In this document: positions 6,503-64,000 of the stretch, piece by piece
How the letters are laid out: the number at the start of each line of letters is the position of its first letter
Numbering within the stretch: the first letter of the stretch is position 1
Assembly: GCA_904063045.1 (NCBI GenBank)
Contig: CAJFCJ010000006.1
Coordinates: 186,001-250,000, forward strand
Direction: 5' to 3'
Origin: Dimorphilus gyrociliatus
Taxonomy: Eukaryota > Animalia > Annelida
DNA length: 64,000 bases
Translations under genes and position numbers: made by a program
Notes under the pieces: model-generated
Seen by the model: the letters and a program-made list of their open reading frames with translations, nothing else
Database searches by the model: none
What the model was told of the DNA's origin: nothing

Positions 6503-7510
6503 ATGAGGGTGCTTGTGGTATACGCTCATAATGAAAAGAAGAGTTTTAACCATGCCCTTCTCGATTCGGCTATTAGGACACTTGAAGAAGAAGGTCATAA
6601 TGTTACAGTGTCTGATTTATATGAGCAAGAATTTGATCCGGTGATATCAAGGAAGGATTTTACTCCAGAATACGAGATAGATCGAAGAGAACATGTAAAT
6701 TACGCTCTAGAATATGGAAAGGCCTGGAAAGAAGGTAGGATTGACAAAAAAATTGTGAGAGAGCAAGAGAAATTAGATGAAGCCGATTTGGTCATTTTTC
6801 AATTTCCTATGTTCTGGATGTCAATGCCTGCAATATTAAAAGGGTGGTTTGATAGGGTTTTTATTGAGAATTACGCTTTTGGAGAAGGTGGAAAATATTA
6901 CGACACTGCCCGATTTTCGGGTAAAAAGGCTTTAATCAGTATAACAACTGGAGGAGGGAGAGGATGGTTCACGGATCACAGTCCAAATGGAGACATTAAT
7001 GTTATCTTATGGCCTATACAAGTAGGTATAATTGACGTATGTCTCAAATCTATAATATTTTATCTCCTTTAAAGAGTATTACCTAAATGATAAGAGATAT
7101 AGTATATCACCTGATCTTAAGGAGATTTAGGTTAGAATAATATATATATATCTATATTTATGCGTATAATTAATTAACAGAATGGAATTTTACGTTTCGT
7201 CGGCTTTGACGTATTGGCCGCCCAAGTTCACTACGCAGTTGAAACAGCAACTGAAAAAGAGAGGCAATTAATACTATCGGGTTGGACGAAAAGATTAAAG
7301 AGGCTAAGCGAAGAAAAACCAATTGAATTCGTATCTCTGTCACAATACGAATACGAAGACGCATCAAAACCAATACAAGGAATGCGATTAAAGGAAAAAA
7401 CACTTGACCAGAACGCAGACTCTGGTTTCGGTTTAACTGTTGGCCAGCATTTAGGCAAGCCCATACCGCCAAATTCATTGATATATAACAATAAAGTTAT
7501 TGAAAGCTAA
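6503..7510 (+). CDS. NAD(P)H:quinone oxidoreductase (flavodoxin-2 fold) with NQO1-type C-terminal extension
   Basis: Exons 6503-7021, 7181-7510. VLVVYAH, VSDLY, FQFPMFW...PAILKGWFDRVF, GDINVILWPIQ|NGILRFVGF, FGLTVGQHLGKPIP. Confidence 0.92.
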
Positions 7511-48251: not shown

Positions 48252-51200
48252 CTATCGTCTATATTCCTGATGGCTAGGTGCTGCAATCTCCGAGTTTGTA
48301 TGATGTTTCTCGTCTTTTCGTTTATAATCGCCTATTGGCGCAACAGCTTTAGTTTTTATGTTTTGAAATGTTGCGTTTCGTTGTAAATCCCTAGAGTGTT
48401 TCGAGTCTTCTAAATGAACAGTAGAGTTCCAAATGGACGGGGGACCAGGTAGTCTTCGTCGTTTTGCGGGTACCACGTCTGGAGGTGGGGATTCTCTTTG
48501 CTTTTTTGTAAAGCTTAGCTTTTGAGGAGGGATACGTATAGTTGGCTCAATTTTACTTGGTTGGTCAGTCGGAGGTGATTCAATGGCTTGCCTTTGCTCA
48601 ACGCTTTCTGGTTCCTTCTCATTTCTCCTTGTAATATCAGCATTTGCTTTTATTATATATTTTTTCTTCCAATTTGCAATTTTCTTATTTGAATAATTGA
48701 CATCTTTAAGACTGTCATGAACTTTTTCTTTTGTGACTATTTTGGACCCTACTATTGTTGGAATTGGCGATTGAACTTGATTATTTACTTCCAGTGCCAT
48801 TTCTACTGCTTTTAAAGAGCTTTGTACAATATTCTATAAAAGGAAAGTCTTGTCAGATTTACACTTTAATTGAAACACCACACAAACCTCCAAGGTTGCC
48901 TGATTTCCTCTTTTAACTATATGATGATATTTTGTAAATAAATATTTATATTTATCATATTTCTTTTATAATGAAACAAATTTATAATTACCCGAACAAA
49001 CTTTGTCTCCCGTTTCATCAGGCTAGATGGACAGTTTAAGTTTCATAAATTAACGAGTCATTGCTATATACTGTATTTATAATATAGAGACTTACGTTTA
49101 AAAAATCATTTAATGCATCATGATAATTTACGTAGGCGTAGAGTTGATGGAAAACCATAGTTTTCCTGAATTTACTTACATCTTCATCATCATCAATGAA
49201 AAAACTTCTGAAACAGCTATACTCCATTTTATCCAATGCTTTTTGTACAGATCTATCCAATATAGAAAATAAATTAATAAAAACATTCAATTTACCCATT
49301 TCAAATTTACATATAATATATCAGAGTTTCTTTGATGCTTTCCATAATCTTTTTAGCATTCGTGGTCTTGTCACAATATTTTTCGAGTATGATTTTTCGC
49401 TCAGTTCTTAACTTTTCAACATTATGCGACTTTTGACTAATAGCTAAGCTAAGATATCTACGAATTTCAATTAGTTTGCTCATGTCACTCTCAGGAATTC
49501 TAAAACGAGAGTACAACATGAACGTCGAATCATAGGTGGTCACTGCTTCTCTCTCACTCTCAAGAAGTGCATCATCCTTAAGCCTAGAATACATGTTAGT
49601 TATTTTCATTGGATCAATTTTCTTCAATTCATCTTGTAGCTGTTGAATTCGCAAAAATAAATTACAATTTATTTCTTTTTCTTCACTCTTACCAATGCTA
49701 TCCTTTTATCAAGATTGCAAATTTCTAATATCAACTCACTGCTTTGGGAGGTTATTAGACTCCTCGACTTTTCAAGCAAAGAAGCAAGATTAACTTGCTT
49801 CTTGGCAATTTTTTCCTATTGGAATGTATAATATCTTAGTTAACTACTTTCATTTGTATGTTAAAATTATTACCAATGTAAAATATGAACAGTAATTGAG
49901 TGGAGATATAGTTTTCTGAAAGAAGGAATTAAAATGTTAGTTTAAATTACTAAATTAAGTCTGTTGTGGTAATGTATTTTGTACTGATCTAATGGGATTT
50001 TATAAGAATTTCTAACACTAAAATAATGTACTGTGTTTTTTCTCAATTTGAAATTGGGCTCAGATTTTGAATCAGGTGTTCTGTACTTGAGAATGTGCAG
50101 AGTAAGTACTGTTAATATTTCAATATACTGTATAGCTGAGCAGTGTCAACTGATAGTACTCGCTTCATATTCTGTGACTACTCAGATATTATATATATGC
50201 TGTTTGTGTACATATACAGCAGTTTTAGAATGATTTTTTAGTTTCATAGGCTTAATTTTGTAAACTTGTGGGAAATATGTTTAGGCATTATTTGTAAATA
50301 TCTTCCACCAATTTTCCTATTGAAATACTCTACTAGGTATAAGCATTTGAATATGACAACAATTTCAATTACTTGACGATTTATAAAATCTTCAGCCGAC
50401 TCATCATCTTCTGATATATCCATATCTGTTATGTCATAATTTTCCTCTCCCTGTTTAAATTTGGTCGCCTGAAATTTCTTCCAGACGTTTCTAGCTGCCT
50501 CGTTTTCTTCTTTATTCTCATAATTTTTTTGTTTTGCTTTCAACTCAACCCAATCATTTGATGTACCTTGGGATATTTCATCTGAAGAAACGGGTAATTC
50601 AATAGATAATCGAGGACTATCATCATCGCTGGACTCTTGACTATTTCCCAACCAATCTCCATTATGAGAATTCAAGAAATTTTTCACTGGCTTAGCATTT
50701 TCATGTAACGTATTGCATACGTCATTAGTATCTTGACTTTTGATCACTTGAAAGCCAAACAAATGATTGTCTGGATTTTTCGAACGTAGGCTTTGTTTGA
50801 ACTTTTCTATTGTGTTCGACTTGTTGGATTTGCTTTCGGACATTTTTTCGGAGTCAGCTTCAGGTAGCTCATCTCGTTTTCCTAACAACTCCTGAGCTAA
50901 AGTTCTCTGAGCTTGTAAAACTTTCATTTTATTTTGGTTATCGGCACATTCTTCTTTCTCATCTTTGTTATCATTGGAAAATTTACTACTTTCTATGTGT
51001 GAATAACGAGTAGGTGGTTGTATTTTCGGTTGCCCCAAACCGCTAACGTTGTTTACATCAAGCCAGTCAAAAGCTTCGATTGTAGTATCATTATCAATCT
51101 CAACTGTTTGAGGTTTTAAAACATCCGGTTCGGGTAGCTTTTTATTTTTATCACCTTCGCCGAATAGAACATATTTATAAAAAATTTGAATGGTATCATT

Positions 51201-54027
51201 TTGACGAACAAGAATAGGTTGAACCATTAAATTTCCATTTTCATGCGAATCTTCTAATACAATTTCATTTGATTTTTCGATGTCTCTAATTTCTGGCTTT
51301 TTCTCACAATCGTTTTTAAGAGAAAGACTTCCAGACAGCTTTCTCTGTTTGTCCACCTGATTACTTTTCCAGTCGTTTTTTCTCTTTGGTCTGCTTATAT
51401 CGTTTCTGTATGACTTGGATTTTGAGCTACGGGGGCTTCGACTAGAATGACGTCTTGGCGAACTAGAGTATTTGTCACGATGATATCTTCTATACTTATC
51501 TTCATAGTAAGATCTTCTTTTACCCAATTGATTAAATCGGTTTTTATCGAAGTAATATTGTGAATGATAAGTTTTTTCATCTCTACGACTGCTGTAATCA
51601 CCATCCCTTCTACTTCTCCACGTTGAAGTTGACAATTTCTTTCCGTTATCAGTTGATCTGTACCCTCTTTCTTTCATATTTTCTTGTGTATCCATTTCTG
51701 AAATAATCTTGTTAGTTGAATCTGTATAATTAATATGCCTGTTGCTCATTGCTTGATCGTGATCTAGGTTTTGAAAGTCTTTATTTTCTGCTTGACAATT
51801 GGTACTTTCGTTTTTTTCTTTATTTGACTCAATGAATCTCCTAATCCGAGGATCTCGAGGGAGATTGCTTGAAAATTGTTGATGGTCAGCCTGAATTTTA
51901 AAAGCCAATAATTGCCAAAAATAAGAAGGTATTCCCAAATTACTAACTTCGTTTAAAGTATCCTCCCAAAGAGAAGCAGACTCTACATCATTGCTTAAAG
52001 AATTCTGATTTTGCAAAGTCAGCTTGACAACATACAGAGGCAAAATTTGACGGGGCCAGTCACACGGAATGACGTCAGTCGATTCCTTTAAATCGTAAAC
52101 ATAAACTAATGAGTTTACGATGTCTTTTTGTTCTGTTTTTTTCAAACACAACGAATCAAACTTCGTCGACAACTCTTGTTTTGATTCGTCTAAATCTTCA
52201 ACGTATCGCCTCTTTCCTGTAGCAATCTGCCGATAATATTTAGATAATAATTAAGCTTTGGAAAACATATTGTGCTTGTTAAAGTTGGAGAAATATCGCA
52301 AATAGACAGAAGGGAAGAAATTATGTCGAACAATAAAAGTAACAAAACGAAAGCTAAAATAAAATAGAATCAGTAAAAGCATAGTCTAAAACTGATACAA
52401 TTCCTTTCTGACCTATTTTTGAACCTTAAATCAGCTCGCCCTTTTTATATTAGAAATTGTAGCAGAAAAAAAATTATCTTTCTTCCTACTCTGATCTTTG
52501 AGACTTAAAACAGAAGAAATTTTTATCAGACAAATTTCAGCTTTGAATATAGTCCATGGTTTGTATATACAAACTTTGACGAACGCCAAGATATGCCCAC
52601 TAGACGTAAACTACATGTAGCACAATAGCTTGTGTTAACAGTTACACATTGGAAATATTACATAATCGTACTCAATGTGGAAAGTATCAAATGTTCACCA
52701 AAATTCTATGAATGCCTTGATCAAAAGATATTATAAATTTGAAAACATGTCTTTTCCTCAAAAGAATCTAGCTATAAAGACATTTTTAACCTATTCTATT
52801 TTGTATTTTGTTTAAAGAAACAGAGCCAATAGTCCTTTTCAGAGGTAATATATAACAAAGGTGGATAACAAAGATAGTAAAGTATGAATTTTGTAACAGA
52901 ATTTCGCTACATGTTGAATAAGCAATTAATTTTAAAATGGTTTCTAAAATTTCTAAAAAATAGAAAAGTTAATGATTGCTTCTCCCATTAAACAATTCAT
53001 TCTAAATTACTTAAACTCTCTTTTTGTCAATATAGTTAACAATATGTTCCAACACTATGCAATACCATTCCGTTTTGATTGAGCCCTCAAATACATCTTC
53101 TGTATGGTTTTCCTCAAAGTTTATGATCAAACTTTAAAAGATATTTACATACAGTATATGTCACTTAAAGAAAGATCATATTTTTTTAAATATAAAAGTC
53201 AAGCATAAGTGTCTCTACGATACTAACTTAACTATTTGCTAATATGAGTGTAATAGAAGAAACAGGATGTTTTACAGAATGCAACGAAATAGAATTATTT
53301 ACCTTGCATACCAATACATAACATTCACGGTTTGAGGTAGCTTTTAAAGCCGACTCTAAAGATCTTAACATCGAAATGCCGTTTTCCGCTTTGCCTGGAA
53401 AGAGAAACGAAACGTCGCAAAAATTTAACTGTCTAGTTATCATTTTCAAAAAACAAGATGTGCTGCTATGTTTTTTTTCTTATTGTCTTTTTTATGCTCT
53501 TTACGAATAAAAACAGAGAATAACAAAAACTACATATTTAAATATGAAAAATACCCAGTTTGTTGGCGAAACCACCCAGTTGTTTTTTAGAGTCTTGTAA
53601 CGATACACCCCAATAACAGATTGCTTCTACAAGAGGCTCTGAGTCAGAGAGGTAAAATGTTATTTCTTGATTAACTATTCCAAATAATTTTTTCAGTGAT
53701 TGAGACTTCTGCCTGCATTTAAAAAACTTGTCAGAACCTCCAGTTAAAATGAAAATATTTCACCTGAAACGCTGTTCTATTACAGCATTCTTGCTGGACT
53801 TTATATAATCAACATTCCATTTATTCTCTAACCAATTTTCAAATTCCTTGCTCTTAGAATCGTCTTCAGTTCTCACTATCATTTTCCATACTTTCAGCCA
53901 TTCACTATCACTTTTTTCCAAATTTCTCATTTGATTTATTTTATTGTATTCTTTGTATTAAAAGAAAAGTTAGCTCTGGAAAGTCATATTTAACATAGTT
54001 GTTACCTTTACTTTGGGTTTCCGTCAT
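48252..54027 (-). CDS. DUF3715 pseudo-PARP domain protein (TEX15/TASOR-like) with long disordered region and helical C-terminal part
   Basis: Phase-consistent 5' exons from ATG 54027 through 53394-53303 to large exon ~52230-50373: VEAICYWGV..KLG|KAENGISMLR..VLVCK|IATGK..KFDS..LVYVYD..PRQILPLYVV. Linkage to exons at 50130-48252 less certain. Confidence 0.68.

Positions 54028-59363: not shown

Positions 59364-64000
<4,637 letters not shown>

What the first reader, a model, noticed from the sequence alone, without database searches (positions are those of the whole stretch)
48252..54027. Hidden TEX15/TASOR-type pseudo-PARP (DUF3715) gene with TEX15-like layout
Seen: short 5' exons missed by the ORF track assemble into a PARP-like domain lacking the catalytic His and Tyr (ITFYLSD, GISM), with segments matching my recollection of TASOR/TEX15 (VQTICEKGL..LGSPSMGVYLSR; FKVLFGK; VYFYEY..PRQCLPYAIV). 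Then a ~1.9-kb disordered RS/acidic exon and a helical C-terminal region; no SPOC or PIN recognised. Established: DUF3715 serves HUSH (TASOR) and piRNA-directed (TEX15) transposon silencing, and TEX15 is regarded as vertebrate-specific. Inference: an invertebrate TEX15-like or novel DUF3715 silencing factor, next to TE relics and Mi-2/CHD.
Basis: partly seen in the sequence, partly recalled or inferred. Interest (0 to 1): 0.8.

Follow-up and report, generated by a model that had tools for sequence, protein, structure and literature searches.

The report
Divergent dead-PARP (DUF3715) gene in annelid

Summary
Window 54027-48252 (minus strand) is one 13-exon gene. Transcript contigs give 11 GT..AG joints. 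It is already in public annotation as uncharacterised DgyrCDS4212-4215 of Dimorphilus gyrociliatus (P0002, 1182 aa), so it is unnamed, not hidden.

Pfam's DUF3715 model does not hit it, even full length. More sensitive tests do link the N-terminal domain (residues ~49-227) to DUF3715:
- HH-suite against bona fide invertebrate DUF3715 domains gives 90-92% probability, P~1e-6, over 170 collinear columns. Shuffled controls never exceed score 21, against 46-48 for the real alignment.
- Against this genome's own active PARP domains the score is at noise level.
- A phase-0 intron sits at the same aligned position as in a bona fide DUF3715 gene of the same genome.
- The catalytic His, Tyr and Glu positions are Leu, Ser and Leu.

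No TEX15, SPOC or PIN domain is found. The helical C-terminal domain matches nothing known. The family has a paralog on another contig and a syntenic, fast-evolving ortholog in one other species. A silencing role is inferred only. The scan holds notes on two sibling DUF3715-type loci in this genome.

The parts
54006..54027 (-). Exon 0: start codon 54027-54025, residues 1-7 (MTETQSK) plus the first base of codon 8
   Evidence: P0002 N-terminus. Donor G|gtaac and acceptor ag|AATAC define a 55-nt GT..AG intron at 54005-53951. The transcript joints listed do not cover this junction. An in-frame alternative ATG lies at 53930.
53763..53950 (-). Exon 1: residues 8-70, N-terminal helices of the domain
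   Evidence: Joint 53711/53763; frame; conserved in ortholog L010 and paralog L009.
53554..53711 (-). Exon 2: residues 71-122. Holds ITFYLSD, with Leu91 (53651-53649) at the position of the PARP catalytic His (human TASOR L184)
   Evidence: Joints; HH alignment; Douse et al. 2020 for the TASOR reference positions.
53303..53393 (-). Exon 3: residues 124-153. Holds GISM, with Ser130 (53374-53372) at the position of the PARP Tyr (human TASOR Y217). The exon ends ...VLVCK153
   Evidence: Joints; HH alignment. An alternative start at about 53443 inside the upstream intron gives isoforms P0016 and P0018, which lack E1-E2.
52227..53302 (-). 1,076-nt phase-0 intron splitting the domain after K153. It is single copy in the genome
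   Evidence: Joint 52226/53303 with no transcript depth inside. Same position and phase as the ~1.15-kb intron of the bona fide DUF3715 gene L001/L002. No other copy in the genome.
51947..52226 (-). Exon 4: residues 154-246, C-half of the DUF3715-like domain. Strand ...LVYVY, extended loop Y196-Q212, then PRQ ILPLYVVKL
   Evidence: Joints; 51% identical to ortholog P0005; paralog hit E 9.7e-8; HH C-half score 32.3, P 1e-4.
50373..51889 (-). Exon 5: residues 248-752, mostly disordered. Contains the R/S/Y/K-rich core (residues 330-430, 51641-51339), a conserved island (residues 462-529, 51245-51042) and an acidic Ser-rich part
   Evidence: Joints; composition; the island is conserved in ortholog and paralog at 36%. 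The 57-nt intron 51890-51946 is retained in frame in isoform P0017.
49096..49915 (-). Exons 6-9 (49915-49873, 49814-49693, 49639-49311, 49252-49096): residues ~753-969, conserved all-helical C-terminal domain (includes FRKTMVFHQLYAY)
   Evidence: Joints; 37-60% identical in the ortholog and 28-31% in the paralog. AF2 predicts long helices at pLDDT 54.7. No Pfam, PDB or Atlas match.
48252..49022 (-). Exons 10-12 (49022-48992, 48916-48888, 48833-48252): basic, Pro-rich tail. Contains the conserved motif at residues 1092-1140 (48527-48381; ...KRRRLPGPPSIWNSTVHLED, NLS-like). Stop codon at 48254-48252
   Evidence: Joints; frame; tail motif 59% identical in the ortholog. The transcript contig runs about 269 nt past 48252, consistent with a 3' UTR.

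Best explanation
Window 54027-48252 (minus strand) is DgyrCDS4212, an expressed 13-exon gene of the annelid Dimorphilus gyrociliatus. Residues ~49-227 form a strongly diverged DUF3715 (RDTS) pseudo-PARP domain. It has a PARP fold with Leu, Ser and Leu at the His, Tyr and Glu positions, so it cannot use NAD+. It keeps the DUF3715-type extended loop before the last strand and the PRQ..P..V motif.

After the domain come a basic R/S/Y-rich then acidic disordered region with one short conserved island, a lineage-specific all-helical domain, and a basic tail with an NLS-like KRRR motif.

The gene belongs to a small, fast-evolving family seen so far only in this worm (two paralogs) and one related species (a syntenic ortholog next to CHD/Mi-2).

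Shown: gene structure, expression, conservation pattern, PARP-superfamily fold, and specific profile-level kinship to DUF3715.

Inferred only, by analogy with TASOR and TEX15: it is a nuclear, non-enzymatic adaptor in RNA-linked transcriptional repression. The pseudo-PARP would be the effector or RNA-contact module, the disordered region would mediate RNA or condensate interactions, and the helical domain would mediate self-association or partner binding.
For: Gene and expression:
- 11 GT..AG joints, with one contig bridging E3-E12.
- A continuous ORF.
- Identical to public protein P0002, which has four isoforms.

Kinship to DUF3715:
- hhalign of P0002:1-250 against four Pfam-verified DUF3715 domains (A3) gives Prob 92%, P 6.7e-7, 170 columns, residues 49-227 against profile 10-197.
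- The family profile A5 gives 90.5%, P 1.4e-6.
- A3 hits TASOR 6TL1 at 3e-22, and its members score 1e-17 to 1e-35 on PF12509.
- 300 column shuffles give mean 13.0, max 20.9, against 45.6-48 for the real alignment; the reversed profile scores 17.1.
- The N-half alone scores 27.4, P 0.0015, in the correct register; 0 of 120 shuffles reach it.
- The C-half alone scores 32.3, and ortholog-only rows score 26.8 over 164 columns.
- A5 against this genome's own PARP catalytic profile scores 16.0, Prob 0.3%, which is noise.

Fold:
- The Foldseek and VIA second-look lists agree.
- Language-model neighbours are PARP clusters, 0.95 with 173 shared features.

Other lines:
- A shared phase-0 intron falls after the aligned Lys in the window gene, its ortholog, its paralog and the bona fide DUF3715 gene L001/L002.
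- Triad and loop positions follow Douse et al. 2020.
- The paralog matches at E 9.7e-8 and 4.2e-7.
- The ortholog is syntenic with CHD.
- CHD is 85% identical between the two species, against 40-60% in this gene's domains.
Against: - Pfam PF12509 gives no hit on the full-length protein or on any exon at E<=10. The six-frame genome search with PF12509 found three exon-level matches at two other loci, but not this locus.
- HMM-to-sequence searches of PDB with the domain or its family profile find nothing.
- The DUF3715 reference set (A3) was retrieved with a profile that included the window's E4. This could inflate the C-half score. The N-half test addresses this, but only at P~1e-3.
- No functional datum exists. 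Tissue of expression is unknown, and no partner (Periphilin, MPP8, PIWI) was linked.
Confidence: 0.75

Rival explanations
1. The domain is a degenerate PARP-fold domain of some other origin, for example a decayed mono-ART PARP paralog, and its resemblance to DUF3715 is convergent or superficial. The protein then has no relation to TASOR/TEX15-type silencing.
For: Pfam DUF3715 fails. Language-model neighbours are labelled PARP (PF00644), not DUF3715. In the structure lists, TASOR, ZAP, RCD1, PARP10 and PARP12 are tied within 1 Z unit. The genome holds many PARP genes, including a tandem cluster on C19.
Against: The profile comparison is specific: score 46-48 against DUF3715 versus 16 against the genome's own PARP catalytic domains. 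The PRQ..P motif after an extended loop, and the phase-0 intron position, are shared with a bona fide DUF3715 gene. TASOR is the top hit, with the highest identity, in the unbiased structural search.
Confidence: 0.12
2. It is a true invertebrate TEX15 ortholog. That means a DUF3715 of the TEX15 clade plus a diverged TEX15 C-terminal domain, acting downstream of nuclear PIWI in the germline.
For: The layout resembles TEX15: an N-terminal DUF3715, a very long disordered middle and a helical C-terminal domain. Fast evolution is typical of germline genome-defence genes.
Against: PF15326 (TEX15) does not hit the protein. Its only weak genome hit (E 0.06) is on another contig. The helical domain has no detectable relatives. 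The literature finds the TEX15-specific domains only in vertebrates. The domain's detectable kin here are TASOR-like stand-alone DUF3715 proteins. I could not place it against TEX15 sequences, because none was reachable by reference.
Confidence: 0.05
3. The similarity to PARP/DUF3715 is a chance or compositional artefact, and the N-terminal region is an unrelated alpha/beta domain.
For: All single-sequence searches fail. The AF2 confidence is poor. The structural Z stays below 8.
Against: Four independent kinds of evidence converge: the HH profile with empirical null, structure search, language-model features, and intron position. The same blocks are conserved in the ortholog and the paralog.
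Confidence: 0.05

Closest known systems
TASOR pseudo-PARP / DUF3715 (RDTS) domain (PF12509; PDB 6TL1)
   Same: - PARP fold with a degenerate active site: Leu at the His position, as in human TASOR L184.
- An extended loop between the last two strands, followed by P-R-[QH]-x-x-P-x-x-V.
- N-terminal position in a long, largely disordered nuclear-type protein.
   Different: - Scores below Pfam's threshold.
- Also lacks the one triad residue TASOR keeps (TASOR Y217 aligns with Ser130).
- The loop is 17 rather than 14 residues, and the essential TASOR Tyr305 position is Leu.
- No SPOC, DomI, DomII or PIN follows the domain.
Stand-alone invertebrate DUF3715 proteins (Helobdella robusta 'TASOR pseudo-PARP domain-containing protein' P0003; D. 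gyrociliatus gene at C6:1.956 Mb, L001/L002)
   Same: Same phylum. An N-terminal DUF3715 followed by low-complexity sequence. The phase-0 intron sits at the identical aligned position.
   Different: Those proteins hit PF12509 at 1e-17 to 1e-35, are 430-660 aa long, and have Q/P/G-rich tails. The window protein is about 20% identical in the domain, is 1182 aa long, and has its own conserved island, helical domain and tail motif.
TEX15
   Same: N-terminal DUF3715, a very long disordered middle and a helical C-terminal part. Rapid evolution.
   Different: No TEX15 domain (PF15326) is detected. The protein is about a third of TEX15's length. The literature holds TEX15's extra domains to be vertebrate-specific. 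Any germline or piRNA link is untested.
Inactive PARPs ZAP/PARP13 and plant RCD1/SRO
   Different: No sequence-profile similarity was found to a profile of five active-type PARP catalytic domains (PF00644) from this genome (score 16, noise). ZAP and RCD1 sequences themselves were not compared. The domain context differs: no zinc fingers, WWE or RST.

Membership tests
DUF3715 / RDTS pseudo-PARP (PF12509) | Scores above Pfam's gathering threshold (28.5 bits) on PF12509 | tested here: not met
   No hit at E<=10 on exon pieces or on full-length P0002 and P0005. The six-frame genome search hit other loci only.
DUF3715 / RDTS pseudo-PARP (PF12509) | Significant, collinear profile-profile homology to verified DUF3715 domains, and not to active PARPs | tested here: met
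   Prob 90-92%, P 0.7-1.4e-6, 170 columns. Shuffles reach at most 20.9 against 45.6-48. The N-half alone gives P 0.0015, with 0 of 120 shuffles reaching it. Against the PARP profile the score is 16.0, Prob 0.3%.
DUF3715 / RDTS pseudo-PARP (PF12509) | PARP (ADP-ribosyltransferase) fold | tested here: met
DUF3715 / RDTS pseudo-PARP (PF12509) | Degenerate H-Y-E triad (no NAD+ site) | tested here: met
   By the HH alignment, the His position is Leu91, the Tyr position is Ser130, and the Glu position is Leu192. The TASOR reference positions come from Douse et al.. This rests on alignment only; there is no binding assay.
DUF3715 / RDTS pseudo-PARP (PF12509) | Extended loop between the last two strands, followed by the PR[HQ]..P..V motif | tested here: met
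   Y196-Q212 (17 aa) followed by ILPLYVV. TASOR has Y303-H316 (14 aa) followed by VCPYAVV. The essential TASOR Y305 is not conserved here, nor in the other invertebrate members.
DUF3715 / RDTS pseudo-PARP (PF12509) | Role in RNA-directed transposon or transgene silencing | not testable with these tools
   Needs knock-down or a domain-swap assay.
TEX15 | TEX15 domain(s) (PF15326) C-terminal to DUF3715 | tested here: not met
   No hit on P0002. The genome's only weak hit (E 0.06, 18 bits) is on contig C11.
TEX15 | DUF3715 domain groups with the TEX15 clade | not tested
TASOR / TASOR-like | DUF3715 followed by SPOC and DomI (and PIN in vertebrates) | tested here: not met
   No SPOC or other Pfam domain on P0002. 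The genome's SPOC hits are on C2, C10 and C5:2.67 Mb, not at this locus. Residues 236-460 are disordered by composition. Caveat: TASOR's own SPOC is divergent and may escape PF07744.
Active PARP (PF00644) | PF00644 match and H-Y-[EILV] NAD+ site | tested here: not met
   No PF00644 hit on P0002. The locus is absent from the 21 genome hits. HH against the PARP profile is at noise level.

The most novel reading that the evidence does not exclude
The protein is a single-chain 'mini-HUSH'. In this reading, a TASOR-type pseudo-PARP effector domain is fused to a Periphilin-like module. That module would consist of a basic Arg/Ser/Tyr-rich disordered region for RNA binding or self-association, plus a helical dimerisation domain. 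It would have evolved in a compact genome (4.87% TEs) where no Periphilin (Lge1) is recognisable.

The resemblance of the disordered region to Periphilin's rests on my recollection of Periphilin, not on a test. The absence of Lge1 rests on one exon-wise Pfam search.
Probability: 0.08. Interest if true: 0.75.

Novelty: new variant of a known kind. Interest (0 to 1): 0.4.

Why it matters
DUF3715 is the shared effector domain of the two mammalian RNA-directed transposon-silencing pathways: HUSH (through TASOR) and the nuclear piRNA pathway (through TEX15). What the domain actually does is still unknown.

This gene is a member so diverged that Pfam misses it, yet it keeps the fold, the loop and the C-terminal motif. 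It has lost even the last triad residue and TASOR's essential loop tyrosine. That narrows which features are truly conserved in the domain.

It also shows that surveys based on the Pfam HMM undercount the family outside vertebrates. This worm has at least four DUF3715-type genes where Pfam finds two. The different C-terminal architecture suggests the pseudo-PARP has been plugged into other complexes.

The practical value is modest: a new domain annotation for an unnamed annelid gene family, and a natural variant for domain-swap experiments.

Tried and rejected
- Pfam on exon pieces and on the full-length protein: nothing.
- Rfam on the window: nothing.
- Word search with the 668-aa open frame: nothing. 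The true product (1182 aa) lay just outside the length filter.
- Language-model search with the 93-aa E4 piece: returned viral RdRp fragments, which is a short-fragment artefact. Discarded.
- phmmer and hmmsearch of PDB with E4, the whole domain, and the family profile: nothing relevant.
- Pairwise BLAST between this genome's bona fide DUF3715 exons and the window exons: only 26 bits on E4.
- Word searches restricted to the N-domain and to the helical domain of P0002: found only P0002 itself.
- The exhaustive profile search found 15 proteins at E<=0.001. Only P0005 is of the window's own type.
- TEX15 (PF15326), Periphilin Lge1 (PF11488) and SPOC (PF07744) six-frame searches: nothing at this locus. 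The best Lge1 candidate is a FYVE coiled-coil protein.
- C-terminal helical model (pLDDT 54.7): only generic long-helix matches in PDB (E>0.4) and in the Atlas (TM<0.45). Uninformative.
- The 1,076-nt intron is not a repeat or TE relic.
- The paralog-only HH test failed technically.
- MAFFT repeatedly mis-placed short exon fragments. Those rows were dropped rather than forced.


Full report
**What is there**

The window is G000:C6:186001-250000 of a 78-Mb assembly. The word search and cluster look-up identify the organism as the miniature annelid Dimorphilus gyrociliatus.

On the minus strand, transcript contigs of the one public run that holds the stretch (X1) give 11 joints. All are CT..AC on the plus strand, which is GT..AG for a minus-strand gene. 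One 3452-nt contig bridges exon 3 to the last exon and runs about 269 nt past the stop. Tracking phases exon by exon gives an uninterrupted reading frame from ATG 53930 to the stop at 48254-48252.

The exhaustive profile search returned P0002 (1182 aa, DgyrCDS4212, CAD5115219.1). It equals this model plus a short start exon beginning at ATG 54027. That exon's 55-nt intron has canonical splice signals, but the listed joints do not cover it.

The gene is not hidden from public annotation. It is annotated with four isoforms but has no name and no domain:
- P0017 retains the in-frame 57-nt intron 51890-51946.
- P0016 and P0018 start inside the E2-E3 intron and lack the first half of the N-terminal domain.

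**A note on method**

The window gene was searched exon by exon until the public product P0002 gave a reference. The paralog and the ortholog were used only as separate exon pieces, as separate rows in alignments. Searches with their joined models were left out.

**Is the N-terminal domain DUF3715?**

Standard tests say no:
- Pfam gives no family at E<=10 for any exon piece or for full-length P0002.
- A six-frame PF12509 search of the genome finds two other genes, at C6:1.956 Mb (two exon-level matches, 44.5 and 32.2 bits) and C5:1.455 Mb (29.7 bits), but not this locus.
- Single-sequence and HMM-to-sequence searches of PDB also fail.

More sensitive tests say yes.

1. Profile-profile comparison. 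I used four proteins that Pfam verifies as DUF3715 (1e-17 to 1e-35). One is named 'TASOR pseudo-PARP domain-containing protein' in Helobdella. Their alignment hits the TASOR crystal structure 6TL1 at 3e-22.
   - Against this reference, HH-suite aligns P0002 residues 49-227 to profile columns 10-197 with 92% probability and P 6.7e-7.
   - The family profile gives 90.5% and P 1.4e-6.
   - 300 column-shuffled controls score 13.0 +/- 2.4 (max 20.9) and the reversed profile 17.1, against 45.6-48 for the real one.
   - The reference proteins were retrieved with a profile that contained the window's exon 4, so I tested the N-half separately. It scores 27.4, P 0.0015, in the correct register, and 0 of 120 shuffles reach it.
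   - The C-half gives 32.3. Ortholog-only rows give 26.8 over 164 collinear columns.

2. Specificity. The same family profile against a profile of this genome's own active PARP catalytic domains scores 16.0 (0.3% probability), which is the noise level.

3. Fold. An AlphaFold2 model was made from an alignment that held only the window protein and pieces of its ortholog and paralog. It is poor (pLDDT 47.8).
   - Foldseek and the second-look list agree.

4. Language-model features of residues 40-235 find PARP catalytic-domain clusters (0.95, 173 shared features, 20 of 30 hits).

5. Gene structure. The intron after ...VLVCK153 | I154ATGKRR is phase 0. In the bona fide DUF3715 gene of the same genome the domain is split at the same aligned position and phase (...LIIFK | YTMGRLTTAIPR). 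The same holds in the ortholog and the paralog.

I take the domain to be a diverged DUF3715, at about 0.8.

**Active site**

Douse et al. 2020 (read) place human TASOR L184 at the PARP His position. They report Y217 as the only retained triad residue, and describe an extended 14-residue loop (Y303-H316) before the last strand as unique to TASOR, with Y305 essential. Through the HH alignment:
- the window protein has Leu91 (TFYL) at the His position;
- it has Ser130 (GISM) at the Tyr position;
- it has Leu192 where PARPs have the Glu;
- it has a 17-residue loop (Y196-Q212) ending in PRQ before ILPLYVV.

The Y305 position is Leu here. It is also not Tyr in the other invertebrate members.

**The rest of the protein**

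- Residues 236-460 and 531-750 have 15% and 21% hydrophobic residues.
- The 330-430 core is S 19%, R 19%, K 14%, Y 10%, with net charge +22.
- A 68-residue island (462-529), the helical region (about 753-969) and a tail motif (1092-1140, with an NLS-like KRRR) are conserved.
- The helical region is predicted as long helices at low confidence. It matches nothing in Pfam, PDB or the Atlas beyond generic coiled coils.
- The TEX15 domain PF15326, SPOC and Periphilin's Lge1 do not hit this locus.

'TEX15-like' therefore describes only a loose similarity of layout.

**Family and evolution**

- A paralog lies at C1:~1.2819-1.2854 Mb. It has the same exon layout and shares the N-domain, the island and the helical exon (E 9.7e-8 and 4.2e-7 in genome searches; sum E 3e-20).
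- A syntenic ortholog sits next to CHD/Mi-2, as in the window. It is in Logan assemblies of SRR23372228-31 from another species, presumably a related dinophilid; that assignment is my inference.
- Between the two species CHD is 85% identical over 878 aa. This gene is 40-60% identical in its domains and about 27% in the middle. It evolves fast, as genome-defence genes often do, but that pattern is not specific to them.
- Apart from these, neither the exhaustive profile search (which used only the C-half) nor two word searches found relatives.

**Literature**

- Schopp et al. 2023 (PMC10578480) report that DUF3715 arose early, that TASOR-like proteins occur across Metazoa, and that TEX15 is vertebrate-specific.
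- A 2026 preprint finds DUF3715-only proteins in cnidarians.
- The genome paper gives 73.8 Mb, 4.87% TEs and a median intron of 66 bp.

A DUF3715 protein in an invertebrate is therefore not new in kind. What is new is this sub-threshold subfamily and its architecture.

**Mechanism**

This part is inferred, not shown. By analogy with TASOR, whose pseudo-PARP is required for silencing independently of complex assembly and binds ssRNA weakly, the protein most likely acts as a nuclear, non-enzymatic adaptor in RNA-linked repression. The disordered R/S/Y region and the helical domain would provide RNA contacts, self-association or partner contacts. I put about 0.4 on this functional reading.

**Earlier scan notes**

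The scan holds first-reader notes on two sibling loci in this genome:
- One note covers the stand-alone DUF3715 gene 1.70 Mb away, which I confirmed by Pfam.
- The other covers a 'dead PARP-like domain' on another contig. Its follow-up could not link that domain to TASOR/TEX15. This prompted my extra controls on the HH result.

Noticed in passing
L009 3898-7394 (G000:C1:1281898-1285394, + strand): A paralog of the window gene with the same exon layout. It has E1-, E2-, E3- and E4-like pieces, a long low-complexity exon (N/S/D-rich), the conserved island (L009 6075-6248) and the helical exon (7101-7394). It is about 30-36% identical to P0002 in the conserved parts.
   Followed up: partly
L001/L002 (G000:C6:1956306-1958400, + strand): A bona fide stand-alone DUF3715 gene (PF12509 44.5 + 32.2 bits). 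It is the ortholog of Helobdella's 532-aa 'TASOR pseudo-PARP domain-containing protein'. Its domain is split by a ~1.15-kb phase-0 intron at the same position as the window gene's 1,076-nt intron.
   Followed up: partly
L003 (G000:C5:1455057-1455242, + strand): A third PF12509 hit (29.7 bits, profile 25-87; ...LGSSSKGVLLSRHADL...). The gene was not characterised, and no SPOC hit lies nearby.
   Followed up: no
window 52227-53302: A 1,076-nt single-copy intron in a genome with a 66-bp median intron, with no transcript depth inside. The genome paper reports that unusually large introns tend to carry open-chromatin peaks, so it may hold a regulatory element.
   Followed up: partly
window 49967-50389 and 53366-53583: Low-depth unspliced contigs of run X1 overlap the 457-nt intron and the E2-E3 intron. 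This suggests intron retention or pre-mRNA. The second one matches the annotated isoforms that start at about 53443 and lack half of the pseudo-PARP domain.
   Followed up: partly
window 60306-62921 (minus strand) and L010 1-4441: The CHD/Mi-2 gene lies immediately upstream on the same strand. It is 85% identical over 878 aa to the neighbour of the ortholog in the other species, so synteny is conserved.
   Followed up: partly
G000:C19:1852312-1868075: A tandem cluster of at least five PARP catalytic-domain hits (PF00644) within about 16 kb, plus further PARP genes on C5, C7, C8, C14 and C15. This looks like a local expansion of mono-ART-type PARPs.
   Followed up: no
L004 (G000:C11:202476-202688, minus strand): The only PF15326 (TEX15 domain) signal in the genome: sub-threshold, E 0.06, 18.2 bits, profile 144-213, in an 85-aa open frame. 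Probably chance.
   Followed up: no
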